The position numbers were made by a program, and so were the translations under genes. A model generated the notes under the pieces. That model saw nothing but the letters and a program-made list of their open reading frames with translations, did not search any database and was not told where the DNA came from. Of a DNA stretch of 64,000 nucleotides, positions 19,496 to 42,550 are shown piece by piece (within the stretch, counting starts at the first letter, position 1; each line of letters starts with the position of its first letter). The stretch comes from Magallana gigas. Taxonomy: Eukaryota. The DNA lies in NCBI RefSeq assembly GCF_963853765.1, contig NC_088855.1, positions 38,316,001 to 38,380,000 of the forward strand. The letters run 5' to 3'.

Positions 19496-22400
19496 ATGGA
19501 ACTTCTAGTCAAATGTGTCGTTCTTTGTAGTCTGTTCATAGCAGGTAGGACATCTGCAGAATTTTCAAAACCTTTTAATTAATTGCATTTATAATTTATT
19601 GCCGTCGCATAGGTTCATGTGTTCTTATCTTTTGGACAATAAGCTCCTCATATAAAGGTCTTGAAGAAAAAGAAACGCTCACTAGATACGATCGCAAAAT
19701 ATTCAATCATGTTTATCTCTAAAATGAACAACAATTTTAGATAGGCCTAAGAACAAAAAATGTCGGTATTCTTGAGAACTTTCGAATGAATTCAAGAAAA
19801 AGGGACTGTCTCCTTCAATTAGGGGCCAAGATACTCGTAAATGTTTTTACACATACCTCAAAAACGATCAAGATTTTATAATATATTATAGAAAGAAAGT
19901 TGTTGATCGTAACAATATCAGTAAAACTCATTGCCACACCCATTGATGACGTAATTAGGGATCTTAGAGGACTTTAATCTTTCTTTATTGTGCTGTATGT
20001 GAAAAAGCAAAACTCTTTGTTAAGCATTTTAAAGGATAATGACAATCGTATACATTGTCTGAAAGGGAGTGGTTGAGGGGGAATTCTGAAATTCATTGAT
20101 ATTTAATCGTATCGTTTAAAAATTGAACGGAAGACCTACTCGTTACTCGTAACGAGATCGTATCTAGTTTCTCTTATGTTACAAATAGCAGTGCGTCTTG
20201 CAACAATATATTGAAAATCATTTAATGTTAAAGAGAGGTAAAAATGAAAAAAAAAAAGAATTTAAAATGCAAACTCGAAAAGTAATAACATTTTGAAAGA
20301 TTGTACAAGTAATATACAGGAAAATTTTTACGAGAGAGAGACAGACAGACAGACAGAGAGACTCTTTAAAATTTAAGTGACTTTCCATTCCGTATCCGAT
20401 AAATACATTGTTCTTACATGCACGTTTTATAGAGATGACTTATAAATACATTTCAAGGGGTAAAAAAATCTTTCTTTTGTTACAGCTAACTGAATACTGA
20501 TTCTGTTAACTGTTATACACTTTTATTCCGAACATGTTATGTATTTTACATCTAGACCGAAAAGAATTTAGGTCTCCCATGCACAACATGCAACTACGCA
20601 CAATCATTGGCGAATGCACAAAATGTACGACACTAATTTAGGATTACAGAGTCTTGTTGTGAATAGATCTCTAAAGCATTTCCAGGTTGTAAACAGCGAA
20701 CTACACGGAGCACGGAGTTACTACTATTTATAAGTCTCGCTCTGTGCCTCTTATTTATGTGAAAACTTATCGCATGATTAATAGATTTTACGAGACGCTC
20801 TGCAAACAAAAGACTTTCTTTGACTTTGTAATACTTATATTGATGATTGAACGGATATCTGTAATCTTAAAAACCTTATCCCAAAAAAACGATCGGGCAT
20901 GTTCAATCTATCCGTAAAAGAAATTTAAACACATTTGACAAAAAAATTGAAACAAAAACATATCCAAATTTGAATGCTAGCAAAATCTTTGAAAAATTGT
21001 TTTCTTCTTTTAATTTCAATTTGTTTCTGTGTAAATAAATCAAGATCAGGTGTAAAATCCTTATCTCCTCACTCATTTTGATATAGAAACACTGGTATTC
21101 AAATTATCTAAGATCCCATTACAAAAGTACAGATACCCCCCCCCCCCCCATAAATACATCTTTCAACAGAATCAAGAGAGACGTAACGACGTAATGATAA
21201 AAAAAATAGCCAGTCAAATATTGTGTGCATTTTGCTGATGCTGCCAGGCGGATACTGATTGTCAAACGCTTGTTTAATAAGCTGGCCTACTGCAAAATTT
21301 CTTATCTGAGGAGTTTTTGTAAAATAAACGTACCCCACGAAAATAGTCGGTTATCGGGTGGAGCTTTATGTGAGGCATGTTGCTAACTGTTCATGTCCGC
21401 TGATTTCCAACACCTGAAAAATGGCGTCGGAAACCATACACCTGGGCATCATTACCTGCATTGTAGTGCATACTCTTATTAGTCAAGGTAGGTGGTACAT
21501 TTGAGAAATGTTTAATGCATCTATTAATTTTATTCAAGTCATCAGGAACATAAGAAAACTGCTTCTGGGTAGCATTCTCGGGGGTGACTGTTTTTCTTTA
21601 TGCAGTGTGTGGGTACTATCCTCTGAACCATAGTGACATTCTTTTCGGACAATTCCCGGACGGCTTTATATGGAGCGCCGCCACCGCCGCCTATCAGGTG
21701 GAAGGGGCATGGAACGAAGATGGTATGATGTTTCAATATAATTATATGTAAATGTAGTTTCATTATAAATGCATTGTTGACATAAGAAGAATAATCTTAG
21801 GAAAATGCATGTCAATACTACAATGACAATGTACAAAATTTATTAATTAATGATATATGATTAAAATCACCTCCTCCCTCTTCCAAAAGATACACGTATG
21901 TATCGTTAATAATTCGACTAATATCAAGATTTACCTGTATGAACAGCAGGTAGAGATGTCAAAATCGATGTTATCAGAATTTTTGAGGAGGTGAAGTGTC
22001 CAATGTTATTCTACCACTTTGACTGTTGTAAGGTTATGACTGATATACATGTATACAAGGATATACAACCTATCTTGTAGGGAGAGGGCCAAGTATCTGG
22101 GACACATTTTCTCACGTCCCCGGTAATATAGAGAACGGGGATACCGGGGACGTAGCATGTGACAGTTACCATAACTACCAGAGGGATGTCGAAATGTTGA
22201 AGGAACTAGGGGTATTCAATTCAGTTATCTACAAAGATGATTTAAACATGTCCTTAGTATCTATGTGGTCTTTATACAGGCACGTACATGTAGTATCGTT
22301 TTTAAAAGGGGGGGGGCTCATCCAAAAAATGTTGACAAGCAAAAAACAAAACCAAAAAAAAAAACCAAAAAAAACCCCATACCTTCAATTTCACTCCTCA

Positions 22401-28400: not shown

Positions 28401-31400
28401 CATGCAACATCTTATAACATTTATTGTTTATATAGATTCAATTGCCACAGTTTTACTTAACGTTGAAAGAGTGATTTTTACTACATTCACAATAATTGGT
28501 GCCGCCAAAAAATAGCGACTGAACCACAGTATTAGACTTTGTATATCACAAAGCTTCTACTATAACACTAGAAAAAAATTCTCAAACCATTGTTCTGGGT
28601 TTTTTGTACCAATTCGAGTGTATTTTTATTGGTAGCTATAAAACTGGATGAGTGCAATGTAAAGGGATACACGGCATGGTCAATGATGGATAACTTTGAG
28701 TGGCGAAGAGGATACTCGGAACGTTTCGGGATTCATTACGTCAATTTTAGTGACCCATCCAGACCAAGAACACCAAAAGCATCCGCAAGGTTCTACCAGC
28801 AGCTGATACGTGAGAACGGCTTTAAGCATGGCTACACGGCTATAGGAGGGCGGGGGGTCGCTCCGGCCATGGAGGGCCAGTTTTACTACGACAAGTTCCC
28901 GGATGATTTCGCCTGGAGTACAGCCACCTCAGCTTACCAGATAGAAGGAGGGTGGAACGAAGGAGGTACTATATTCAGTACAGTTGAACTGTGAATGTTA
29001 TACTTCTTTGTTTGGTGTCTAGAGCCGCATCTCTTAGAAGACTTAAAAAGAGATGACAATATATGCACTCGATTAAATGACTGATTTAGTATTTAACTGT
29101 ATCCATGTTGAATTCATCTCATAATTTCTTGAAACAGGAAGAGGACCAAGCGTTTGGGACACGTGGGTTCACGAATATACACACGTGGAGAAAAACGCCA
29201 CTGGAGATATAGCATGTGACAGTTACCATAGATACAAGGAGGATGTCCAGTTGTTGAAAAACTTAGGGGTAAAAAAAAATCATTTTCAATGTTTACCAAT
29301 TTGGTATTTGACAGTGTTAAAATTTATCTGTTTTGAGTGTTTTAAAAAGTTAAACTACACATTATGGAAGTTTTCTTTGAATTTTCCCAAAGGTTTTTCA
29401 ATGAGTATCATTTTCATTGAATAAATATTTCATTAGGTATCTCATTACCGTTTTTCCATCTCCTGGCCAAGGATTTTCCCAGACGGTACCAAAGAAAGTT
29501 TGAACAAAGAAGGCATTCAATACTACAGCAACGTGATTGATGAGCTTCTAAAGTTCAACATTAAACCCATGGCGACCCTCTTTCACTGGGATTTACCGCA
29601 AGCTTTAGAGGACCAAGGCGGGTGGCTGAACGAAAGCACGGTCTATCACTTCAGAGACTATGCCGATGTGTGTTTCCGAGAGTTTGGTGACAGGGTAGGT
29701 TAAATATATCAGTTTCATTTTTTTTTTATTACTTTTGCTCATTTTTATAAACAGTTTACTCAAGATATTCCATTCAGACATCAATATTATCTAAAATTTT
29801 AGACACAATTTAACACCCATATAGAACAAAAATGTTACGTACTCAGGAAATTACAGATGGAATATTTTTTTTTACAATCTTTCTAATTTATTTTCAATAT
29901 ATATTACATGTATATTGTGATTTAGGTTAAATTGTGGATATCTTTCAATGAACCTGGGCTAACGGCATGGACTTGTTACGGAAATGGTGGAATGGCGCCG
30001 GGTCGGCACGGGCACCCGGGGACCTACCCATATATAGTGACACGCAACATCATTCTAGCTCATGCGGAAGGTTATCATGTTTTGAAAAAGAAGTACCCTC
30101 AACAGAAGGGTATGTTGATCAGTTGGAATTTATTTCTAAACACTGTGTGCAGGACAATGTAATGGTGTTATTTGTACCAATCATATTCGTTCTTACGGTA
30201 TTTCCCCTTGCCCCTTAGGTCAGTATGGAATCACGTACAGTATTGGCTGGGCGGAACCTAAAGATCCGTATAAACCTGAGGATATTGAGGCTTCCGAGAG
30301 AAAACTACAATTTGATGCAGGGTGGTTTCTTAATCCAATATATATAAATGGCGACTACCCAGAGGTTATGAAAAAGAAGGTAGCAGAGAAAAGCGCCGCC
30401 CAAAATTTCACTTCTTCACGTCTTCCGCCATTTACAGAGGAAGAAAAACGCCGCATCAATCGTAATCCATTTTCAGTTAAATTCTATTGCTAGCCAATCA
30501 TAAGAAATAAATATTTCTCGGTAACACATCAGACAAATCTTAAAGAATTCAAAATATTCACTTTTAAAAGTTCGCGTTTTAGGCAAATCAAAAGGAATTT
30601 TTTTTCTACATTCAAATAACGTGGATGTCATTTGTTACACTTTTTGAAGAATTATAATTTTGATAAGTTTTACTAACTTAATGAATAAAAAAAAAGAAAA
30701 CAAAACAATACTTTGTGAGATATATTGCACAATTAGGCCAGCATTTTTTAAAATTTCGATTTACAAACCCGCCGACCCTATTTTTTAAAAATTCAAATAA
30801 AAATAAAAGGATCTGAACTAGCTATTTATTTTATTTTTTCCTCCGACCCGAAGTTTTCTTTCTGGTAAAAATAAAAATAAATGTTGATGCAACCACGTAT
30901 GTGTAGTCTGAATTATTGTTGTTCATGCATTGATTTAATAAAAAGACCAAGTTCTTTCCGATCAAGTCACAGGCACTAGAAGTCACAAAAAACCACCAAA
31001 GGGCCTACTCCTGTTTGCTTTCGTCCAACCCTACAATTTACGACCCTATTAAGTTTTGTGATCGGCAACTTAGCCAGAATTTCCTCAATAAAGAGAAGTT
31101 GAAGTCTTTTTCTATCACAATTCTGTAAATTAAAAAAAAAACACCTCATTGATAAGAAAATGATAAGTTACTTTAAAAAAAAACATTTTTGCAAAATAAA
31201 TTCTAGAATAATCATAATTTAACCGTTTGGAAATAGATCCTCTACATAACGGTTGTACATTTGTAAGTGGGTCATAGGGTTGGACTAATAACCCTAAACA
31301 CACTGAACACAGGTCTTATGACTGAAGGAAAGAGAATAATTTTATTTGTCATTAAGGTTAAAGCTAACAAAATAACGAAACATTTCCTTTATTAAAGGTA

Positions 31401-34400
31401 TAGTTACATAAATAAATAAAATTTTAAAAGTTATTTAGTCTTTTTTAAATAAAAAAACTTGTTTGATTTTTTACTGACATTTATGGACATGCTTCTAATC
31501 CAATTTATTTTCAGTAACAATATTTTAAATTTTGAATTTGTGAATAGCATTGTTAATTTAATCAAATAAATTATTTCTCAAACTTCTTCCTATTTTTCTG
31601 CAAGGAAGAAGTGAAAACTCCCTTATTTTTTTTTTTTGGTCTTAATGTATATGTACAGTATGTACTTGTATTTATAAAAAAAAAAAACCTTCGTTTTTAT
31701 ACATGCATGTACAATATATCAACACAAATTTTCAGTGCCCATGGATAAAATATGTTATGATAAGAACATCACCAACAACCAAAATTACTTAGATATTTTT
31801 AAAAAATGGCAGCTCCTAAACACATGTTCTTATTTTAAAAATAAAAAAAATATTGTTGAAAAATTGTTTTATTTTCATTTTTTTTCTTGACGGACAAATT
31901 TTTCAATTTTATTTTTATTTTTTTTCCCTCCTCCTCACCAAATAATTTGAAAAATATTTCGTAAATCTAAAAATAAAAAAAATGCTGGCCTTAATACGAT
32001 TGGTGTATACGTAAATGATTGAAATTTTCTGTTGAAGAAACCGGTGACTTTTTCGGATTAAACCATTACTCCTCCTCCTACTTCTTCCCAAGAGAGCACG
32101 ACATTACTGATGTGTCTTATGAGGCTGACCAAGACGTGGGAAGTGAAAATGATCCAAAGTGGCTGGGGTTGGTATCAAAACCTTTTCTTTGTATGTACCT
32201 GCATATGTAAATTACTTTTTATTTTCGTTTGCAAACTCTTTCCAAATCACTAGGTAAAAATCAGTTGAAAATGCTTTTCATTTGGTACATGTACTTCGCT
32301 CTTGCATATGGACTGATTAGCATTTGTATGTTAATGTTGATTTTCCAATTATGGTAAGACATGTATTTCACAAAAAGGAGGATGTCTCTGTTGCAGCATA
32401 GACATTTCCAAAAGATTTTTTCTTCATTACAGATCTGGATCTTCTTGGTTATTTGTCACTCCATTCGGGCTGAGAAAAGTTTTAAATTGGGTGAAAATGA
32501 CCTATAACAACATTCCCGTTTACATAACGGAAAATGGTGTATCGGATAGAAACGGATCACTTAACGACTACAGTCGCGTATACTTCTATAGAAACTATAT
32601 CAACGAAATGCTGAAAGGTACATAAGTCAAATCGAAATTTCATATGCTTCATGTAAAAAATAAACTCAGTAGTTTTTTTTTTTACATGTCGACAGTCTCT
32701 TCATGTTTTGTGCTATTAATTCTACGGAATTATTATCTTTTTATTCAGCTGTTAAACTCGATGGCTGCAATGTGAAAGGTTATGCAGCATGGTCATTTAT
32801 GGACAACTTTGAATGGAACACTGGCTACGCCGAGAAGTTTGGAATGCACTACGTTAACTTCAGTGATCCAGAACGACCTCGAACCCCGAAACTATCAGCA
32901 GTCCTCTACAACCAACTGATCAAAGACAACGGTTTTCTTGAAGATGCTGCTACTTCCCCTTCTAAAGGAAAAGAGCTGGGTGTCTACCGAGAGCTTCCGT
33001 ATGCAGATAAGTTCTATTACGGAACATTTCCGAAAGAATTTGCTTGGGGCGCCTCCACTTCGGCTTATCAAATAGAAGGAGCCTGGAATGAAGACGGTAA
33101 AATATATGTACGGTTAATTAATTGGAATAATTTTAAGCATTTGCTATAATGGTTTAATGTGTGGCTTTATATCTCATTCAGGTAAAGGAGAAAGTAATAT
33201 TGACAAAATGACTCATAGTGACTTTGAATCAACCGATGGAAACATTGCCTGCAATAGTTATAAAAAATTTAAAGAAGATGTGAGAATATTAAAAGAAACG
33301 CACGTAAGTGATTTAAATATAAATCTGCATCAAGGTATGAAACTTTCTTTCCTTTACTTCAAAATTTACATGAATAAGTATTCATCTATAATTACGGTTA
33401 TATTTTGATGTTTCAGGTGTCATTTTACCGTTTTTCAATATCCTGGAGTCGAATTTTACCTGAAGGAAATGTCAGCGATGTTAATCACTTAGGGATTCAA
33501 TACTACATGAACATGACAGACGCACTGATAGACGCAGGAATCACCCCTGTTGTGGTCATGCATTACTATGACATGCCGATTACAATATATAACCAAGGCG
33601 GATGGAAAAATCCAAACACAATTCATCTCTTTGTTGAATATGCACGAGTTTTATTCAAAGAGCTAGGTTCCAGGGTACTGTACAATATTTATATAATAAT
33701 GTTACATTTATTTCAGCGGTCTGTCTGTTTTGTAATTAATTCGATGTCACAATTATATTGACTCATGATTGAATTGTTGTAGGTCAAATATTGGATAACT
33801 ATCAATGACCCATACTCTGTGTCAGTTGGTTTGGATGCTAATGAAGAAAACCCACATACAACTGGACATAATTTGATAAAAGCCCATGCATATGTGTACA
33901 AATTGTACAAGGAGGAATTCAAGGAACAACAAAAAGGTTTAGCGTATTTACAATACACAACAATTATTATCACAATTAATAAATTAACAAATATTTAGAA
34001 TTGGGTCATTTAAATACATTATTTTAATTTAGGTCACGTGGGAATTTCTCTTCGCGCTGATTGGTTTGAACCTGTAACACCTACCGACCCATCTGATATT
34101 GAAGCCACCAACAGGAAAATGGAACATTCTTTTGGATGGTTTGCGCATCCAATTTTTGTTAACGGCGACTATTCACAACTGCTCAAGTCAATATTAGAGA
34201 AAAAAAATACAACTATCCCCAAATTTACAGATTACGAATCAACGCTGATTAAAGGTTAGATATGGTAGTTAATCCATTATGTGAACATTCTGTGTGTGTG
34301 GTCATTGCAGATAACAGTTGGCTCTCGTTAAAAATGTATTGAACTATAACATTTTTTCTGTAGATTCTTCTGATTTCTTGGGATTGAATTTCATATCAAC

Positions 34401-36968
34401 ATTTAAAGTAAAATCAAAAGAAAATGATTTTAAAGGATTTGAGTTTGAGACAGATACAGAGATAACTTTCAATTCCTCGTGGCCTAGGTGAGTGTCAAAA
34501 GTACATTTAACTTTATCATAAGTTTACTGTGTCCAGTGAATACTAATTACCGATAAAAACAGATAACAGATAATTAAATTATCAGAGGGGAAATCACAAT
34601 CAACTAATACGTTACTAAAAAAAATTATTTGTGCTTAGAATAGAATAATTACTTTTAGAATAAATAAAAAAATCCAGTGTCCAAAATTTACCATAAGCAA
34701 TAAGGTTAGTGTTTGAAGAAAGATATTTCAAACTTATATATTCAGGTGCAATGGTTTTCAAAATAATTCCATATACATGTTATTTTACTTTGACAGAAGC
34801 AGCATAGCAACCATAAGGTTTGTACCGTTTGGTCTTCGAAAGGTTTTGAACTGGATTAAGGATAAATATCACAATGTCACAGTATACGTCACAGAGGCTG
34901 GGTTTCCAGATGACTCGGGGACTCTACAGGATAACACTAGGGTAAAATTCTACAAGGAGTACGTCAATGAAGTATTAAAAGGTGCGTTCGTTAATACAGT
35001 AAACAATAGCATCAGCTTGTAGTCACTATCGGGATGATACTCAATTATATCGCATTAATGATGTTGAGATTTTGAGAGTTAACCAGAACAATAGACTTGA
35101 GTACATTAACTGGAACTGTATTTATGCCAAAATTGTATTATTGTTACAATGTATTTACATTCTTTTGTTTTGTTTCTATTTTCAGCTGTTAGATTGGATA
35201 AATGTAATGTTAAAGGATTCAACATTAAAAGCCTGATAGACGATGTCGATTACACCGGAAGTATAAAACATAAATACGGAATTTACAAAGTGGATTTCAA
35301 TGATCCATCAAGACCTCGAACAAGAAAATCTTCAGCTAATTTCATAACAAATATTATAAAAGATAACGGCTTTCTACAGGGAAAATCTTACTCTGTTGAA
35401 TCAGGCATAGGGGAATTTAATCCAAACTATCCTTACAGGCCATTGAGACAGGAAAATGAGATGTATTCTGGTAGTTTTCCTCACGGTTTTGTATGGAGCA
35501 CAGCTACAGCGGCTTACCAGGTAGAAGGCGGATGGGACGCCGATGGTAAGTCAAAATAAGATTGATGAAAGTTTTTGAAAGTATCCTTGTAGAATAAATG
35601 TACATTAGCTATACCTCCATATTTTATTCCAATACATGAAGACAAATTGACGCGAACGTCTGAGAAAACATTGGATTGAAACAGTTACTGTGTTTTTAGA
35701 AGATTTCAGAGAATTGTGCTTAATTATTATGATGCATGTTTTTTAAAATCAGGTAATTAAGATGAAATAAAGAATGTAGCTTAAAATGCATCACCGTGAT
35801 AATAAGGTGAAACAGTTTAATACTGAGAAACTTTGACTTTACATTACATGATGGCAAAATTTGAAATCGTCAACAGTTACTGTATTAATTAAGTAATAGG
35901 AACCAATATCAACTGCTAGGTGTTTATATTAATTTACGCTTATCTTGTAAAATACGTTCTTAACTAAATTATTAATAACAGCAACTTTTTAATTTAATTG
36001 ATTTTGGTTTACTAACATACAAAAACTATGGTAATTATACCCTCACATGGAATACGCAGGTAAAGGCAAAAGCAACTGGGATGTTTTCTCTCAAGAGCCT
36101 GGACATATAGTTAATAATGACAATGGAAACATAGCCTGTGACAGTTACCACAATTATAGAACAGACGTAGAGCTTCTGAAGAATCTAAAGGTTTGAGTAC
36201 TAATACACATTTTATTGGAAATGCAACAAGTTACTGTTGAAAAAATGTCATGTTGCTGTAAAAGTTTCCTAGAACAAACCCGATTTACAAACTGTTGTCT
36301 ACATGGTTTCTATGCACATTGCTAGGTAACACACTACAGATTCTCTATATCGTGGTCTCGGATACTGCCACTGGGGACGCTGGAAAAAATCAACCAACCA
36401 GGGATAGATTATTACAACAAGTTGATCGATGCCCTTCTAGAGGCTAATATCGCTCCAATGGTGACCCTCTACCACTGGGACACCCCACAGGCCTTCAACA
36501 ACAGCGGGGGCTGGCAAAATAGCACTATATCTGACCATTTTGCCAACTACTCCAGATTGTGCTACGAACGGTTTGGTGACAGGGTAATGATATTGAGAAA
36601 TCTACCTTGTGTCGGTGATTCAGATTCTGTCATAATATTGTCATATCAAACCGCTGCTATAACTTCTTTTATATTTCATTCGTCAGGTAAAACTTTGGAT
36701 AACTCTGAATGAACCCTGGGTAGTCTCTAACCTAGGCTACGAGCTTGGCGTGAATGCCCCTGGTATAAAAGGGAGGGGGGATCGTATCTACCAAGTGGCT
36801 CACAACCTCATCAAATCTCACGCCAAAGCTTACAGAGTCTATGAAAAAGAATTCAAACAAAAACAAAAAGGTAATCATGCTTTATTCGGATATAAAACAT
36901 TAAAATATGTAATAATCTAGGAATGATTTAGAGAATATCGAATGATATGTAACAGTTCTGAATATATT

Positions 36969-37048
<80 letters not shown>

Positions 37049-40000
37049 GTATATAGTAATACGACTACATTTAATTTTTACCAATGTTCAGATTAATGTA
37101 TATGCATAATAACAAGAGAGAAGAAATTAGACTTCAGATAATTATTATAACAGGACAAGTGGGTATAACGCTGAATACGGACTGGCAGGTTCCAAAGAAC
37201 CCGGAAAACCCCAGCGACCTGGAGGCCTCCGAACGAGCCATCGACTTCATGTTAGGGTGGTTCCTCAATCCAGTGATGAAGGGAGATTATCCCAAAGTGA
37301 TGAGAGATCAGGTAGACAGGAAAAGTCGGGAACAGGGACTGCCAACTAGCCGGCTTACTAGGTTTACCCAAGCTGAACAAATGGATATAAAAGGTGTACT
37401 GATGATGGAGTTTAATTGAATGTCGAAGGGGGGATTCAAATAGGAAATTCGGGGGTTTTTTTCCAGAAACTTTAATAGTTGCTTCAAAAATTAAACTTAA
37501 ACTTTATGCATAGAGTTAAGTTTTTCAAATAATATTTACGAAATATAAAAAAAACTGTATTGCAGGTTCATACGATTTTCTTGGAATAAATTTCTACACG
37601 TCGAACGTTGTGACCTACAAACCATCGACTGGACAGAGCTACAGTGCTGACGGTGACATCGATATCACAAAGGACCCGGAGTGGCTGGGGTGACCACGAT
37701 TTCTTATATTTCTTCTTACAGAATTTTGTTATGTCTTTAAAAATTTAATAACGAAAGTAAATCAGTACGTGACATCTAAAGGATCCGTCAAATGATTTTG
37801 AAAAGTAGAATGATACTTTGAAAATTTATTAAGTTTTCAAGTTTACTAACATTATTTTATCTTTTACTTTGGTAATTTGTATGGTGTAGAAGTACATGTC
37901 AATCAAAATACAATAAACCATCATAAAGATGTGATACGGGTATATTTTTCGAAAAAAAAATCGTTACGTCCTGGGACAGAAAGAGTTCTCAATTAATTTG
38001 CTATACTCATCAATATTTAAGATTGCTTTTTCTTACTGAATTATATTCATCAATAGGAATTGATCAGCAATAATTTTTCATACCTGTGATTGAATACAGA
38101 TCTGGCTCCGACTGGCTAAAGGTGACCCCTGTCGGGATCCGCCGAATGCTGAACTGGATCAAGTACACGTACGGAGATTTCCCCATTTACATAACAGAAA
38201 ATGGAATCTCGGATAGAAACGGATCTCTACAGGACGAGCATAGAATATTTTATTACAAACATTACATTAATAATGTTCTTAAAGGTAAGGATCATTAGCA
38301 AATCTGTATTGTATTCTTGATGTAAAATTTTATTTAAGAAAAAGAAGCAAAAATAAAATTAAAACAACATAAAACATGTCCAATCAGAAATACAAGTATA
38401 TAAAAGCTACAATGTCTTGATAGCTAAAATTTATATGCAAACAAATTCGGTTATAGACGAAATCGGATTTGTCCCTCTGACCAATTCTCATAGGTGATGC
38501 AACACGGTATATCAAATGTATTTACTGTCCTGTGAGCATGATCTTGAGAAGAGAATATCAAATTGATATCTTTAAGATAACGATATTCCATATAATAATT
38601 CAATCTTTTTAAAATTTGGATTTTCTTTTTCTTTTAGCCATCGTGACTTTTTGAAGAAAAAAAATTATTTTCATGACAGAAATTAAATGGTTGGAATGTG
38701 TATCAATTATATATCGCTATTTTTGTTCGCTACCATCCAATTTTAAACTACATAAATGATAAATGCATACAGTTTTCCTGTTGCATATTATATTTTTAAA
38801 GTGAACATTCTTGTATCTTGTACACATAGCTATACGTCTTGATGGGGTAAACGTTCGAGGGTACACGGCATGGTCATTAATGGATAACTTTGAGTGGGCA
38901 CGTGGGTATACGGAACGCTTCGGACTTCACTATGTTAACTTCAGCGATCCTGAGCGACCACGCACACCAAAGGAAAGCGCCCGTTTCTTTAAAAAACTCA
39001 TTGAAAACAATGGCTTTCCTGACGAAAAGTCGAAGTTCTCTTTTCCGTTTGCATTGGAACCAGCCTTTCCAGGAAATAATCCTTACCGGGCACTTTTTGA
39101 GGAAGACGACTTCTACTACGATTCTTTCCCAGAAGGCTTTGCGTGGAGCACTGCCACATCGTCGTATCAAGTGGAAGGAGCTTGGAATAAGGATGGTAAG
39201 ATTTAAATGGGATCATTCCTGCCATATATATATATTAAGAAATGTTAAAGGAGGTTTGAAATATTCTTTGATATTTATAATTACAGAATATAATATCCCA
39301 ATTAATTTTTACTGTACTAGTATTTGACCAGCATTGTAAAAAATCCTGATTTTAAAATACGAAGGTAAAAATTTAAAAATCCGTAGCGGCACTCATACTC
39401 ATGAAAAGTAATCATTAGCTAACGCTCTAATAAACTGAAAATTAATATAAAAAAAATAGTTGAAAATAATTTTAATTTTCGAAAAGTGGATGATTACTTA
39501 CTAAAAGGAGTTATCTCCACAGGGGGAACCTCTGTCATTCAGTCAGCTAAATGGTAACTGAATGGTCTGGAAATGTGACTGAATGACATACATGTAGCTA
39601 GGCCAATCAGTCAGATTTTAGTAACCTTTTAGTTGACTGAATGGCATAACTTCATCCTGTCCCCAATGATTTGATCCTTACAATATCCTTAAATGACTGT
39701 CGGATCTATTCTTCCTTTCAGGTAAAGGTCTTGGAATATGGGATGTCTTCAGCCACACACCTGGTAAGGTAGTCAACAATGACACGGGTGACGTTGCATG
39801 CAATAGCTATGACAAGTTTCACGAAGATATCAAACTGTTAATGGATATGAAGGCAAGTATTTTAAGATGCAGATGTATCCGGTTTTTTTTACCAGTTAGC
39901 AGTAAGATTAAATTTTTTTCTTTGTAAGCAATCGTTCGGATAAAAAATACAATTGTACCGTTATAAGTCTGATTCTCCCTTTTATGAATCAAGTTAAAAG

Positions 40001-40658
40001 GCTATTTTTTTCTTTTGATTTTGTCATCGCGAGTTTTTCTTAAACATGACTGTATTTATATTTTAATTTAAATCATAATGCTTTTAGATATCATAATTAT
40101 AGATGTAACGCACGACTTTTAAGTTTTCAAAAGGACGATTACGGATAAAGCAGTTACTTGAAAATATAATCCCAACTCAATAAAGTTCATGCGCGGATCC
40201 AGAATTAATTTCCAGGGGGGGGGGGTGTTTCAACGGTTATTTGAGTTTGCCCGGGGGGGGGGTGGTGTCCGAAGCATATTTTGGTAATTTTATAATTCAA
40301 ATTAATGAAATTAGAATTTTGCAGACCCCCTGACCCCCCTTATGAGTTTAACTATATAGTTATATATTTACTTTACGCTTAACCTGCGTTTAGGTTACAC
40401 ACTACCGTTTCTCGCTATCATGGCCACGAATCTTACCTGATGGAACCACACAGAATGTGAACTCCCTGGGAATACAGTACTACAGTAGTCTGATTGATGC
40501 AGTCCTAGACGCCGGAATCGCCCCAATGGTCACTCTGTACCACTGGGATCTCCCACAAGCCCTAATGCAATATGGCGGCTGGCAAAGTGAACGCACGGCC
40601 GAATTGTTTGCCGAATACGCTAGGTTTTGCTTTTCTCTGTTTGGAGATCGGGTATGTG

Positions 40659-40727
<69 letters not shown>

Positions 40728-41041
40728 ATTTTAAATACGGTTACTGAAGGAAGCAGTAAACGGATAAAGAGTTTCTTTTCTCCTAGGTAAAGTTTTGGAT
40801 AACATTGAATGAACCGTTTGTCGTCTCAAACCATGGCTACGAGATCGGAGTTATGGCACCTGGTTTAACAGGAAAGGGCGATCGAATATACCAAGCTGGT
40901 CATAATTTGATTAAGGCGCATGCGAAGGCGTACCACATCTATCAGAACGAGTTCAAACGGGCTCAAAAGGGTACGTGAATATTAAGTGCTTTTGTGGTTC
41001 CATCAGGTAACGTATATCACAGCGAATTTTATTTACATGTA

Positions 41042-41086
<45 letters not shown>

Positions 41087-42550
41087 TAAACTTTTAAGTT
41101 GGGGAAAAAAGAGATAAAACGTCAGAAGAAGGTGTTGTAAAATATGTGATCATCAGAACTATTATTCTTCTTGAAATTTTGAAATGAGTGTGTTTTTTGT
41201 GCTCAAAACATTTTTATACTATTGTATTGCAAATGCAAATAGTTTTAAAAACAAAAACCAACTCAATTCAGGCATCATTGGTATAACTTTAAACACGGAC
41301 TGGCAAGTTCCAGAAGATCCCAACAGTGAGAGAGATTTACAGGCGTCGCACCGGGCCATCCACTTCATGTATGGCTGGTTCTTAAACCCAGTTATGAAGG
41401 GAGACTACCCCGCAATCATGAAGGAACAAGTCGACCGGAAAAGTCGTGCGCAGGGATACAAAGAAAGTAGACTTCCGGAATTCTCAGCAACGGAAAAGGA
41501 TTATATTAAAGGTATTCACCTTAACTTTACAAAGTTAACGCATACCAGATATCTTCGTTACACATAATAAAATTAATAACTAAACAGGATTAAAAATAAT
41601 TGTGATCACTGCATTATGCATAAGATGTAAATAATTATACACTTTGTGCGTGCCAGGTACTTACGACTTCCTAGGCATGAATTTTTATACGTCAAACCTG
41701 GTTTCATCCATTGATAATATAAACCAGAGTTACTACGGGGACCAGGATGTCAACTCCACGAAAGACCCTTCTTGGCTCGGGTAATGTCGCACAATAGGTT
41801 CTTTTATACATCATGCTGATGCAAATGAAGTACATCTTTGCTCGAATTATACAATGATATATAATGTAGATCTTTCATTCATATGATGACCTGATTGTTT
41901 TAGATCGGGGTCATCTTGGCTCAAAGTGACTCCTAAAGGAATTCGACGTATGCTGAATTGGGTGAAATATACCTACGGTGATTTCCCAATCTACATCACG
42001 GAAAACGGAGTTTCGGACCTTAACGGAACCATAAAGGATGAACATAGGATCTTTTATTACAAACATTATATCAACAATGTTCTAAAAGGTAGGTTTTGAA
42101 ATGATGGAATAACTTTTTAGAAGTAATTTTTTTATTGTAAAATCGCAGTTGTCTCTCCTTTGAGTGACATTACATTCTACTGACGATAGATAACGGGTTT
42201 TTTTTTCAGCCATCCGACTTGACGGAATAGACGTTCGTGGATACACGGCATGGTCATTAATGGATAACTTCGAATGGGCAAGAGGATATTCGGAACGCTT
42301 CGGTCTTCACTATGTTAACTTCAGCGATCCCGCCCGACCACGTACACCAAAAGCAAGTGCGCGGTACTATAGGTCTATTATCGAAAAAAATGGATTCAAG
42401 AAAGAAACAGTTAATAACAATGAGAATAAAACACCAGCAAACAGTAACAATCGAACACCTAACCCAGTTTCTGGGGTACAAAAGACAGTTATCTCTTTTC
42501 AAGTCCTAACTGGTTTTGTCATAGGTGTTGTGTTATGGAATTTTAAATAA
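19496..42550 (+). CDS. Six-domain GH1 beta-glycosidase (lactase/phlorizin hydrolase-like), gene 2; complete, 2974 aa
   Basis: 43 exons: 19496-19544 (signal [16 protein letters not shown]), 21606-21722; D1 22081-22211, 23092-23349, 23523-23949, 24065-24194, 24336-24520, 24723-25052; D2 25478-25608, 25940-26200, 26316-26499, 27404-27628, 27722-27848, 27966-28150, 28636-28965; D3 29138-29268, 29437-29694, 29926-30109, 30219-30461, 32038-32167, 32433-32617, 32749-33096; D4 33182-33303, 33417-33674, 33783-33936, 34033-34254, 34364-34487, 34797-34981, 35186-35545; D5 36060-36190, 36326-36583, 36687-36870, 37154-37393, 37566-37689, 38100-38284, 38830-39195; D6 39722-39852, 40394-40651, 40787-40970, 41272-41511, 41657-41780, 41904-42088, 42210-42550. 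Total 8925 nt = 2974 aa + stop, with consistent phases. NEP and TENG are intact in D1, D2, D3, D5 and D6; D4 has NDP and TEAG. One GC-AG intron (39853). Confidence 0.93.
19681..20168 (+). mobile_element. 3' fragment of HINE family A in intron 1 of gene 2
   Basis: Close direct copy of about 18610-19060. Ends AACGGAAGACCTA-CTCGTTActcgTAACGAG-ATCGTATCTAGT. Bounded by a perfect 13-bp inverted repeat, ACTAGATACGATC (19681) / GATCGTATCTAGT (20156). Confidence 0.75.
21421..21487 (+). CDS. Candidate alternative first coding exon (1b) of GH1 gene 2, encoding a second signal peptide
   Basis: aaaaATGG start; [22 protein letters not shown]; phase-1 donor G|GTAGGT compatible with the acceptor at 21606 (118-nt intron), giving ...[13 protein letters not shown]. 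Confidence 0.7.
22277..22557. mobile_element. Poly-G/C-containing MITE with 10-bp TIRs (CAGGCACGTA...TACGTGCCTG)
   Basis: Perfect terminal inverted 10-mers. A related copy lies in opposite orientation at about 60291-60596. Confidence 0.65.
26865..27336. mobile_element. Poly-G/C-rich non-autonomous element, intronic; related copy at 51714-52018 in opposite orientation
   Basis: Termini GGCGTCGTAAC / TTCCGACGCC are imperfect inverted repeats. Internal blocks (GAGAAGTGGGAGTCATAGG; GTTAGACCTAACCATTAG) match the reverse complement of 51830-51970. Confidence 0.7.
27861..27930. repeat. Tandem duplication of about 35 bp in an intron
   Basis: G(A)nTACTTGCTTTATGTTTGATGACTTT x2. Confidence 0.9.
30736..31990. 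mobile_element. PIF/Harbinger-type non-autonomous element (1255 bp) in a gene 2 intron
   Basis: TIR GGCCAGCATTTTT / AAAAATGCTGGCC with flanking TTA on both sides (30733-35, 31991-93). No transposase ORF. Confidence 0.8.
36971..37046. repeat. (AT)n microsatellite
   Basis: Read directly. Confidence 0.98.
39524..39665. repeat. Small imperfect fold-back (possible MITE relic) in an intron
   Basis: TGTCATTCAGTCAGCTAA versus TTAGTTGACTGAATGGCA inverted arms, with an internal GACTGAATG copy. No clear TSD. Confidence 0.4.
40188..40342. mobile_element. Truncated poly-G element beginning CATGCGCGGATCCAG
   Basis: GC-rich terminal motif followed by G-tracts; no matching second terminus. Confidence 0.45.
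40667..40724. repeat. (CT)n microsatellite
   Basis: Read directly. Confidence 0.98.
41045..41082. repeat. (TA)n microsatellite
   Basis: Read directly. Confidence 0.98.

What the first reader, a model, noticed from the sequence alone, without database searches (positions are those of the whole stretch)
19496..42550. A single polypeptide with six tandem GH1 domains (2974 aa), five with complete catalytic pairs
Seen: 43 exons splice into one open frame of signal peptide + six GH1 modules + hydrophobic tail, with NEP and TENG intact in D1, D2, D3, D5 and D6. Established: vertebrate lactase-phlorizin hydrolase has four homologous regions with only III and IV catalytic, and Klotho has two. Inference: this is a larger, more catalytically loaded beta-glycosidase array, probably a gut-surface enzyme attacking several algal or detrital beta-glycans or glycosides. 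Near-constant 258- and 185-nt exons and domain junctions lying inside exons suggest growth by unequal crossover rather than exon shuffling. Automated pipelines may already label it LPH-like, but I do not know of functional work on a six-domain form.
Basis: partly seen in the sequence, partly recalled or inferred. Interest (0 to 1): 0.8.

Follow-up and report, generated by a model that had tools for sequence, protein, structure and literature searches.

The report
Oyster six-domain GH1 beta-glycosidase gene
This is a real, expressed oyster gene for one 2974-residue protein made of six beta-glycosidase (GH1) domains, but a six-domain enzyme of this kind has already been purified and assayed in a shipworm, and similar genes are annotated in many bivalves, so it is a new member of a known kind.

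Summary
The protein has a signal-peptide-like start, six GH1 domains and a short hydrophobic C-terminus. D1, D2, D3, D5 and D6 keep NEP and TENG. D4 has NDP and TEAG and has lost sugar-binding residues.

RNA data confirm all 11 introns in the 6 kb tested. One RNA contig runs from D2 through D3 into D4.

[quoted passage not shown] Proteins of about 3000 aa with six GH1 domains are annotated as LPH-like in Crassostrea virginica (82.6% identical), Saccostrea, Ruditapes and Mya. Predictions with 7-8 domains also exist.

New points:
- The gene is one of two tandem six-domain paralogues, next to an inverted two-domain GH1 gene.
- The D4 decay is conserved across oyster genera.
- The C-terminal tail looks like a GPI signal rather than an LPH-type anchor.
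- Six-module GH1 in a filter feeder contradicts the published view that it is an adaptation to wood feeding.

Function as a digestive beta-glucosidase is inferred, not shown.

The parts
19496..42550 (+).
   Evidence: HMM-guided splice model. 82.6% identical over its full length to C. virginica P0156, 2986 aa.
19423..19428 (+). TATAAA motif about 70 nt upstream of the ATG, preceded by a G run
   Evidence: Read directly. A promoter role is inferred only.
19496..19544 (+). Exon 1 (49 nt): Met plus a hydrophobic signal-peptide-like stretch; donor GTAGGA; spliced to 21606
   Evidence: Best acceptor is a pyrimidine-rich CAG at 21606, and the start aligns with the N-terminus of P0156. Not checked with reads.
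21606..24916 (+). GH1 domain D1 (NEP and TENG intact). Exon 5 (23523-23949, 427 nt) is a fusion of the 184- and 243-nt exons of the other domains
24962..28832 (+). GH1 domain D2 (NEP and TENG intact)
   Evidence: Introns after 27628, 27848 and 28150 seen in RNA.
27849..27965 (+). 117-nt intron with no in-frame stop (27% GC, carries an internal 34-nt tandem duplication). If retained it would add 39 aa
   Evidence: Splicing seen in X1 and X4 contigs and in 6 raw reads of X22.
28869..32969 (+). GH1 domain D3 (NEP and TENG intact); contains the 1576-nt intron 30462-32037
   Evidence: All its introns seen in RNA.
33003..35391 (+). GH1 domain D4, degenerate: acid/base Glu is Asp (TINDP), TENG is TEAG, HWDLP is [14 protein letters not shown] is KSLIDDVDY
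   Evidence: The same decay is seen in gene A and in the C. virginica and Saccostrea orthologues. D4 is 74% identical to C. virginica against 80-89% for the other domains.
35452..39035 (+). GH1 domain D5 (NEP and TENG intact)
39099..42463 (+). GH1 domain D6 (NEP and TENG intact). The intron after 39852 has a GC donor (GCAAGT)
42464..42550 (+). Polar, Asn-rich linker with Thr and Pro, then about 18 hydrophobic residues ending 3 residues before the stop; GPI-signal-like, with no cytosolic tail
   Evidence: maximum Kyte-Doolittle 2.16 at -21.
1..14638 (+). Gene A (paralogue). It starts about 8 kb left of the window, also has six GH1 domains (42 or more exons, at least 2973 aa), and has its own stop and hydrophobic tail. 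It is 65.5% identical to gene B
30733..31993 (.). Multi-copy repeat inside intron 19, transcribed on both strands at high depth
   Evidence: depth table, and loose ends at 30733/30735 and 31991/31993.

Best explanation
Window 19496-42550 is a genuine, expressed oyster gene for one 2974-residue secretory glycoside hydrolase polyprotein.

Shown:
- It has 43 exons and six tandem GH1 domains joined inside single exons.
- Five domains (D1, D2, D3, D5, D6) keep the acid/base Glu (NEP), the nucleophile Glu (TENG) and the sugar-binding His, Trp and Glu motifs.
- D4 has Asp at the acid/base position and has lost those sugar-binding motifs. This state is conserved in the paralogue and in two other oyster genera.

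Inferred:
- Each of the five intact domains works as an independent retaining beta-glycosidase.
- D4 is a non-catalytic module with a folding, spacing or binding role, like GH1D1 of Aplysia akuBGL. That domain has the same Glu-to-Asp change and is inactive.
- The protein enters the secretory pathway and is held on, or released from, digestive epithelium by a GPI-type C-terminal signal.
- It cleaves beta-linked gluco-oligosaccharides and glucans from phytoplankton, as the six-domain shipworm homologue LpMDGH1 does for cellobiose and long-chain glucans.

The gene grew by tandem duplication of 7-exon blocks. It was then duplicated as a whole, before Crassostrea and Saccostrea split.
For: - Gene model and domain count.
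- RNA: 11 of 11 introns confirmed in window 27300-33299. One 2642-nt contig (X1) runs from exon 12 to exon 22, that is D2, D3 and into D4. Stranded reads lie on one strand only over the exons.
- RNA runs hold 0.29-0.40 of the sampled words of each half of the gene. For the 5' half that is close to the exon share, and for the 3' half it is a little below it.
- Catalytic and binding motifs per domain.
- Full-length orthologues with six Pfam GH1 stretches: C. virginica P0156 at 82.6% and Saccostrea P0155 at 79%.
- LpMDGH1 (P0165) aligns over its full length at 44.5% identity. It was purified and shown to be the main caecal beta-glucosidase, acting on cellobiose and long-chain glucans (PMC5840672).
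- akuBGL GH1D1 carries Asp at the acid/base position and is inactive. Its structure 8IN1 is the closest solved one.
- In the tree, A_Di pairs with B_Di for every domain, each with Saccostrea orthologues; D5+D6 and D2+D3 are sister pairs.
- Exon lengths and phases repeat with a period of 7 exons.
Against: - No enzyme assay, tissue localisation or protein-level data exist for the oyster protein.
- The run records are coded, so the tissue is unknown.
- Exon 1, the signal peptide and the GPI-like tail rest on sequence inspection only; no predictor was available.
- 31 of the 42 introns were not checked with reads.
- Post-translational cleavage into smaller units, as happens in vertebrate LPH, is not excluded.
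- Sabbadin et al. found GH1 much less abundant in the oyster digestive gland than in the shipworm.
- A molluscan survey lists female gonad for C. gigas GH1 expression, so a non-digestive role is possible.
Confidence: 0.8

Rival explanations
1. The locus encodes several shorter GH1 genes or transcripts (one or two domains each), and the six-domain frame is an artefact of joining them.
For: The cluster holds a genuine two-domain GH1 gene on the other strand. One- and two-domain GH1 enzymes are common in molluscs.
Against: Every domain boundary lies inside a single exon with an open frame. One RNA contig spans D2, D3 and the start of D4. Only one signal-peptide exon and one stop were found. Orthologues in three other genera are annotated at 2964-2986 aa.
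Confidence: 0.03
2. It is made as a six-domain precursor and then cut, like vertebrate pro-LPH, so that only some domains reach the mature enzyme. D4 or the N-terminal domains would act as an intramolecular chaperone and then be discarded.
For: In vertebrate LPH, domains I-II are removed and act in folding (cited in PMC5840672). D4 is non-catalytic by sequence.
Against: In the only six-domain protein studied, LpMDGH1, the mature protein keeps all six domains. In the oyster the N-terminal domains D1-D3 keep complete catalytic motifs, unlike LPH I-II.
Confidence: 0.12
3. It is not mainly a digestive enzyme. It would be a cell-surface glycosidase or receptor-like protein with another role, for example in gonad or glycolipid turnover, or Klotho-like.
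For: The hydrophobic C-terminus suggests surface tethering. A molluscan survey lists female gonad for C. gigas GH1. Klotho is among the closest solved relatives.
Against: Klotho-type proteins have lost their catalytic glutamates, whereas five domains here keep both. The characterised relatives LpMDGH1, akuBGL and CjCEL1A are all digestive beta-glucosidases.
Confidence: 0.1
4. Genes A and B are read through into a single twelve-domain transcript.
For: They lie on the same strand about 4.9 kb apart. The donor before gene A's last exon and the acceptor of gene B's exon 2 are both phase 1.
Against: Gene A ends with its own stop codon and hydrophobic tail, homologous to gene B's. Gene B has its own ATG, signal-peptide exon and TATAAA. 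Orthologues of A and B are annotated as separate proteins of about 2970 aa in Saccostrea. No reads were laid on this interval.
Confidence: 0.02

Closest known systems
LpMDGH1, the multi-domain GH1 of the shipworm Lyrodus pedicellatus (UniProt A0A2P9JAC1; Sabbadin et al. 2018, PMC5840672)
   Same: Signal peptide plus six tandem GH1 domains in one polypeptide. It aligns over its full length at 44.5% identity. Some domains are degenerate. It is a bivalve digestive beta-glucosidase.
   Different: In LpMDGH1 four domains (2, 4, 5, 6) are intact and domains 1 and 3 are degenerate. In the oyster five are intact and only D4 is degenerate. LpMDGH1 has no C-terminal hydrophobic tail; the oyster protein has one. 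One-to-one orthology of the last domain is rejected (AU p = 3.6e-8). The oyster protein has not been studied biochemically.
Annotated oyster orthologues: C. virginica A0A8B8ESH9 (P0156, 2986 aa) and Saccostrea echinata LPH-like (P0155, 2964 aa; P0154, 2976 aa)
   Same: Six GH1 domains, the same D4 decay and the same kind of C-terminal tail. Identity to gene B is 82.6% and 79%. P0154 is the orthologue of gene A.
   Different: These are other species and are predictions only, labelled 'uncharacterized' or 'LPH-like'.
Vertebrate lactase-phlorizin hydrolase (LPH/LCT)
   Same: A multi-domain GH1 polyprotein of the digestive surface. About 49% identical over three domains. It mixes catalytic and non-catalytic domains.
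   Different: It has four domains, with only III and IV catalytic. It has a true transmembrane helix followed by a charged cytosolic tail. Its pro-region is removed.
akuBGL of Aplysia kurodai (PDB 8IN1) and CjCEL1A of Corbicula japonica
   Same: Molluscan digestive GH1 enzymes with tandem domains. akuBGL GH1D1 has the same Glu-to-Asp change at the acid/base position as oyster D4 and is inactive. 8IN1 is the best solved match.
   Different: They have only two domains. The neighbouring gene C on the minus strand of this cluster has that two-domain architecture.

Membership tests
Glycoside hydrolase family 1 (Pfam PF00232 / CAZy GH1) | Sequence matches the GH1 profile above the curated cut-off | tested here: met
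   Single exons score 41-119 bits against a cut-off of 22.6. There are 90 exon matches in the cluster. My own HMM finds six near-full domains.
Glycoside hydrolase family 1 (Pfam PF00232 / CAZy GH1) | Acid/base glutamate in the T-x-N-E-P motif | tested here: met
   Present in D1, D2, D3, D5 and D6. D4 has Asp (TINDP).
Glycoside hydrolase family 1 (Pfam PF00232 / CAZy GH1) | Nucleophile glutamate in the I/V-T-E-N-G motif | tested here: met
   Present in D1, D2, D3, D5 and D6. D4 keeps the Glu but reads VTEAG.
Glycoside hydrolase family 1 (Pfam PF00232 / CAZy GH1) | Sugar-binding residues (Gln in AYQxEG, His in HWDLP, Glu-Trp in DNFEW) | tested here: met
   All present in the five intact domains. 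In D4 the His, Glu and Trp are lost.
Glycoside hydrolase family 1 (Pfam PF00232 / CAZy GH1) | (beta/alpha)8 barrel fold and retaining beta-glycosidase activity | not tested
The closest solved relative, found through the orthologue, is 8IN1.
Six-domain molluscan GH1 polyprotein (LpMDGH1 type) | Six GH1 domains translated as one polypeptide behind one signal peptide | tested here: met
   One open frame across 43 exons, with domain junctions inside exons, and an RNA contig spanning D2 to D4. The signal peptide was judged by eye only.
Six-domain molluscan GH1 polyprotein (LpMDGH1 type) | Soluble, with no C-terminal membrane segment | tested here: not met
   The oyster protein ends in about 18 hydrophobic residues. 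LpMDGH1 ends right after domain 6.
Six-domain molluscan GH1 polyprotein (LpMDGH1 type) | Domain-by-domain orthology with LpMDGH1 | tested here: inconclusive
   A clade of oyster D6 with heterodont d6 is rejected (p = 3.6e-8). The matching clades for D2 and D3 are not rejected (p = 0.11 and 0.12). The groups were named after the tree had been seen.
Vertebrate lactase-phlorizin hydrolase | Four GH1 regions, type I transmembrane anchor with cytosolic tail, and lactase and phlorizin hydrolase sites in regions III and IV | tested here: not met
   There are six domains, five of them with catalytic pairs, and no cytosolic tail after the hydrophobic stretch. The database label 'LPH-like' reflects homology, not membership.

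The most novel reading that the evidence does not exclude
Six-module GH1 polyproteins are not an adaptation to wood feeding, as published in 2018 and again in a July 2026 preprint. They are an old and repeatedly remodelled feature of bivalve digestion.

A filter-feeding oyster carries two tandem six-domain paralogues that predate the Crassostrea/Saccostrea split. Each has five intact active sites, a conserved pseudo-glycosidase D4 and a GPI-like anchor. Its D5/D6 pair arose or was homogenised within the oyster lineage. On this reading, the count of six in oysters and in shipworms is partly convergent.
Probability: 0.55. Interest if true: 0.45.

Novelty: new member of a known kind. Interest (0 to 1): 0.3.

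Why it matters
The gene itself is ordinary for a bivalve. Its value is as a correction. The literature treats the six-module GH1 architecture as unique to wood-eating bivalves and adaptive for them (PMC5840672; preprint 10.64898/2026.07.25.740686). An oyster has two such genes, and clams, scallops and tunicates have predicted proteins with six to eight modules. The architecture therefore cannot be explained by wood feeding alone.

The oyster pair is a tractable comparison for several questions:
- Why are catalytic GH1 modules chained together?
- What does the conserved dead module D4 do?
- Do the five live modules differ in substrate?
- Does anchoring by the tail, against the soluble shipworm form, decide where digestion happens?

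Tried and rejected
- A whole-library phmmer search with the 164-aa exon listed no six-domain protein. The longest hit was a 1927-aa bird LPH. It served only to supply sequences for an HMM.
- dN/dS between genes A and B gave nothing. Synonymous sites are saturated in five of the six domains, so constraint on D4 rests on identity values only.
- Gene A's first exon could not be fixed. Several ATG/donor candidates fit.
- AU tests for positional orthology of D2 and D3 with the heterodont domains were not decisive.
- Pfam found nothing in the 328-aa minus-strand frame inside gene A's long intron (10346-11329), nor in three frames of 129-146 aa downstream of gene B.
- The look-up of earlier findings near this place was blank.
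- The unspliced exon 13/14 version (3013 aa) was considered and rejected, because RNA shows the 117-nt intron removed.
- A twelve-domain read-through of genes A and B was considered and judged unlikely from sequence alone. It was not tested with reads, because the single read-laying run was used elsewhere.
- The window species' own annotated protein did not appear in either protein search, so my model could not be compared with that species' annotation.
- No structure or complex prediction was run, because the fold is not in question.
Full report
**What is there**

The window has no N. Single open frames on the + strand between 21.5 kb and 42.5 kb match Pfam Glyco_hydro_1 (PF00232) at E 1e-13 to 1e-34. 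Several frames hold the last 60 positions of the profile followed by the start of a second match.

A six-frame scan of the whole assembly (564 Mb, 29 contigs; the window is C3:38316001-38380000) found 90 GH1 exon matches. All lie in one cluster from 38300515 to 38358397. Only 80 candidates were scored, so other GH1 genes elsewhere are not excluded.

**Gene model**

I built a GH1 HMM from 39 single-domain proteins returned. I located the exon cores. For each pair of neighbouring cores I listed all frame-compatible GT/GC..AG pairs and kept the pair whose spliced peptide scored best.

The chain runs without a stop to TAA at 42548-42550. Upstream, the ATG at 19496 opens a 49-nt exon that encodes a hydrophobic, signal-peptide-like stretch. 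It has a GTAGGA donor and joins in frame to a pyrimidine-rich acceptor at 21606. A TATAAA lies about 70 nt upstream of the ATG.

One 429-nt open stretch contains a 117-nt segment, 27849-27965. It has 27% GC, a GTTAGT donor and an AAAG acceptor.

- With it retained, the protein would be 3013 aa.

There are 41 GT-AG introns and one GC-AG intron, after 39852.

**RNA support**

Runs labelled as oyster or oyster metagenome hold the stretch. RNA runs hold 0.29-0.40 of the sampled words of each half of the gene. For the 5' half this is close to the exon share. For the 3' half it is a little below the exon share of about 0.47.

I laid two contig runs and two raw stranded polyA runs on window 27300-33299.

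- All 11 predicted introns there appear as GT..AG joints, including the 117-nt one. It is seen in two contigs and in six raw reads.
- One 2642-nt contig runs from exon 12 through the D2/D3 junction exon and all of D3 into the D3/D4 junction exon.
- Over the exons, raw reads lie on one strand only.

The remaining 31 introns and exon 1 were not checked with reads.

**Domains and catalytic residues**

The HMM finds six near-full domains. Five exons (330-366 nt) each carry the end of one domain, a short linker and the start of the next.

Exon lengths and phases repeat every seven exons:

- Lengths: about 330-366, 131, 258, 184, 240, 124-130 and 185 nt.
- Start phases: 1, 1, 0, 0, 1, 1, 2.

There are two exon fusions or splits.

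| Domain | Acid/base motif | Nucleophile motif | AYQxEG, HWDLP, DNFEW |
|---|---|---|---|
| D1, D2, D3, D5, D6 | NEP | TENG | all kept (D5 reads HWDTP) |
| D4 | TINDP | VTEAG | AYQxEG kept; YYDMP and KSLIDDVDY in place of the other two |

The same D4 decay is present in the paralogue and in the C. virginica and Saccostrea orthologues. D4 is the fastest-evolving domain. It is still 74% identical between this oyster and C. virginica, against 80-89% for the others. This suggests it is retained for a non-catalytic purpose. Aplysia akuBGL GH1D1 has the same Glu-to-Asp change, and the recombinant domain is inactive.

**Surroundings**

- Gene A lies on the same strand, from about 8 kb left of the window to window 14638. 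It also has six GH1 domains, 42 or more exons, its own stop and its own hydrophobic tail. It is 65.5% identical to B.
- Gene C lies further left on the minus strand. It has two GH1 domains and no tail.

In a maximum-likelihood tree of domains, A_Di groups with B_Di for each of the six positions, and each has Saccostrea orthologues. The six-domain form therefore existed before the A/B duplication, which predates the Crassostrea/Saccostrea split.

Oyster D5 and D6 are sisters (99/96), and so are D2 and D3 (99/98). A clade of oyster D6 with the last heterodont domain is rejected (AU p = 3.6e-8). The matching clades for D2 and D3 are not rejected. The groups were chosen after seeing the tree. Gene conversion would give the same signal as a lineage-specific duplication.

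**Comparison with what is known**

Sabbadin et al. 2018 (PMC5840672) cloned LpMDGH1 from the shipworm Lyrodus pedicellatus.

- It is 2752 aa, with a signal peptide, six GH1 domains and no membrane segment.
- Domains 2, 4, 5 and 6 are catalytic by sequence.
- The mature protein of about 300 kDa keeps all six domains.
- They purified it and found activity on cellobiose and long-chain glucans.

The same paper called the six-domain architecture unique to the shipworm. A July 2026 preprint still presents it as an adaptation of wood-feeding bivalves. The databases say otherwise:

| Species | Length (aa) | GH1 domains |
|---|---|---|
| C. virginica | 2986 | 6 |
| Saccostrea echinata | 2964 and 2976 | 6 each |
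| Ruditapes philippinarum | 3037 | 6 full |
| Mya, Mactra, Dreissena | 2557-2860 | 6, with a degenerate first domain; the Dreissena sequence also ends mid-way through its last domain |
| Mercenaria, scallops, Physella, tunicates | about 3600-3900 | 7-8 |

All are gene predictions, and some may be fused tandem genes. The closest solved structure is akuBGL (8IN1), followed by Klotho.

**The C-terminus**

Genes A and B, their orthologues and proteins of Mya, Mactra, Haliotis and Babylonia end in 17-20 hydrophobic residues at or within a few residues of the stop. In genes A and B a polar, low-complexity linker precedes this stretch (Asn-rich with Thr and Pro in B; Ser/Thr/Pro-rich in A). No charged tail follows it.

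Bird LPH has a helix followed by a charged tail of about 20 residues. LpMDGH1, the Ruditapes protein and the chiton protein have no such stretch.

This layout is typical of a GPI attachment signal. That is my inference from general knowledge; no predictor was run.

**Most likely working**

The protein enters the secretory pathway and carries five independent retaining beta-glycosidase sites and one dead module. It is tethered to, or shed from, the digestive epithelium. There it finishes the breakdown of beta-linked gluco-oligosaccharides released from phytoplankton glucans.

The gene structure, expression, domain count and residues are shown. The substrates, location, anchoring and role of D4 are inferred.

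**Verdict**

The novelty is that of a new member of a known kind, and it usefully contradicts the view that the six-module architecture is an adaptation to wood feeding.

Noticed in passing
Its first exon was not resolved.
   Followed up: partly
left of the window, G000:C3:38300515-38306246, minus strand (L009/L010): A two-domain GH1 gene (gene C, at least 957 aa) with no hydrophobic tail, head-to-head with gene A. Both its domains keep the catalytic glutamates, though D2 reads NEA instead of NEP.
   Followed up: partly
window 30733-31993 (intron 19 of gene B): A multi-copy repeat with very high RNA depth on both strands in all four runs. Many reads run off into unlike sequence at 30733/30735 and 31991/31993. 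It is probably a transposable element expressed from other copies.
   Followed up: no
window 27303-27333 (intron 11 of gene B): A short, high-depth segment with loose ends on both sides in the raw RNA reads. It is probably part of another dispersed repeat.
   Followed up: no
window 10343-11329, minus strand (inside the 3057-nt intron of gene A): An open frame of 328 aa with no Pfam match. It may be a degenerate mobile-element gene.
   Followed up: partly
window 17859-18949, and 19741-20073: A 437-nt tandem repeat (2.5 copies, 82-86% matches) lies in the spacer between genes A and B. Related sequence recurs just downstream of exon 1 (18654-19015 resembles 19741-20073), so exon 1 sits between repeat copies.
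   Followed up: partly
window 27849-27965: This intron is 117 nt long, a multiple of three, has no in-frame stop and carries a 34-nt internal tandem duplication. If retained it would insert 39 residues into a loop of D2 without breaking the frame.
   Followed up: yes
P0270, P0272, P0273, P0276, P0280 (database proteins): Predicted proteins with 7-8 GH1 domains exist in Mercenaria, Ylistrum, Physella, Styela and Ciona. Whether they are single genes or fused tandem predictions is unknown.
   Followed up: partly
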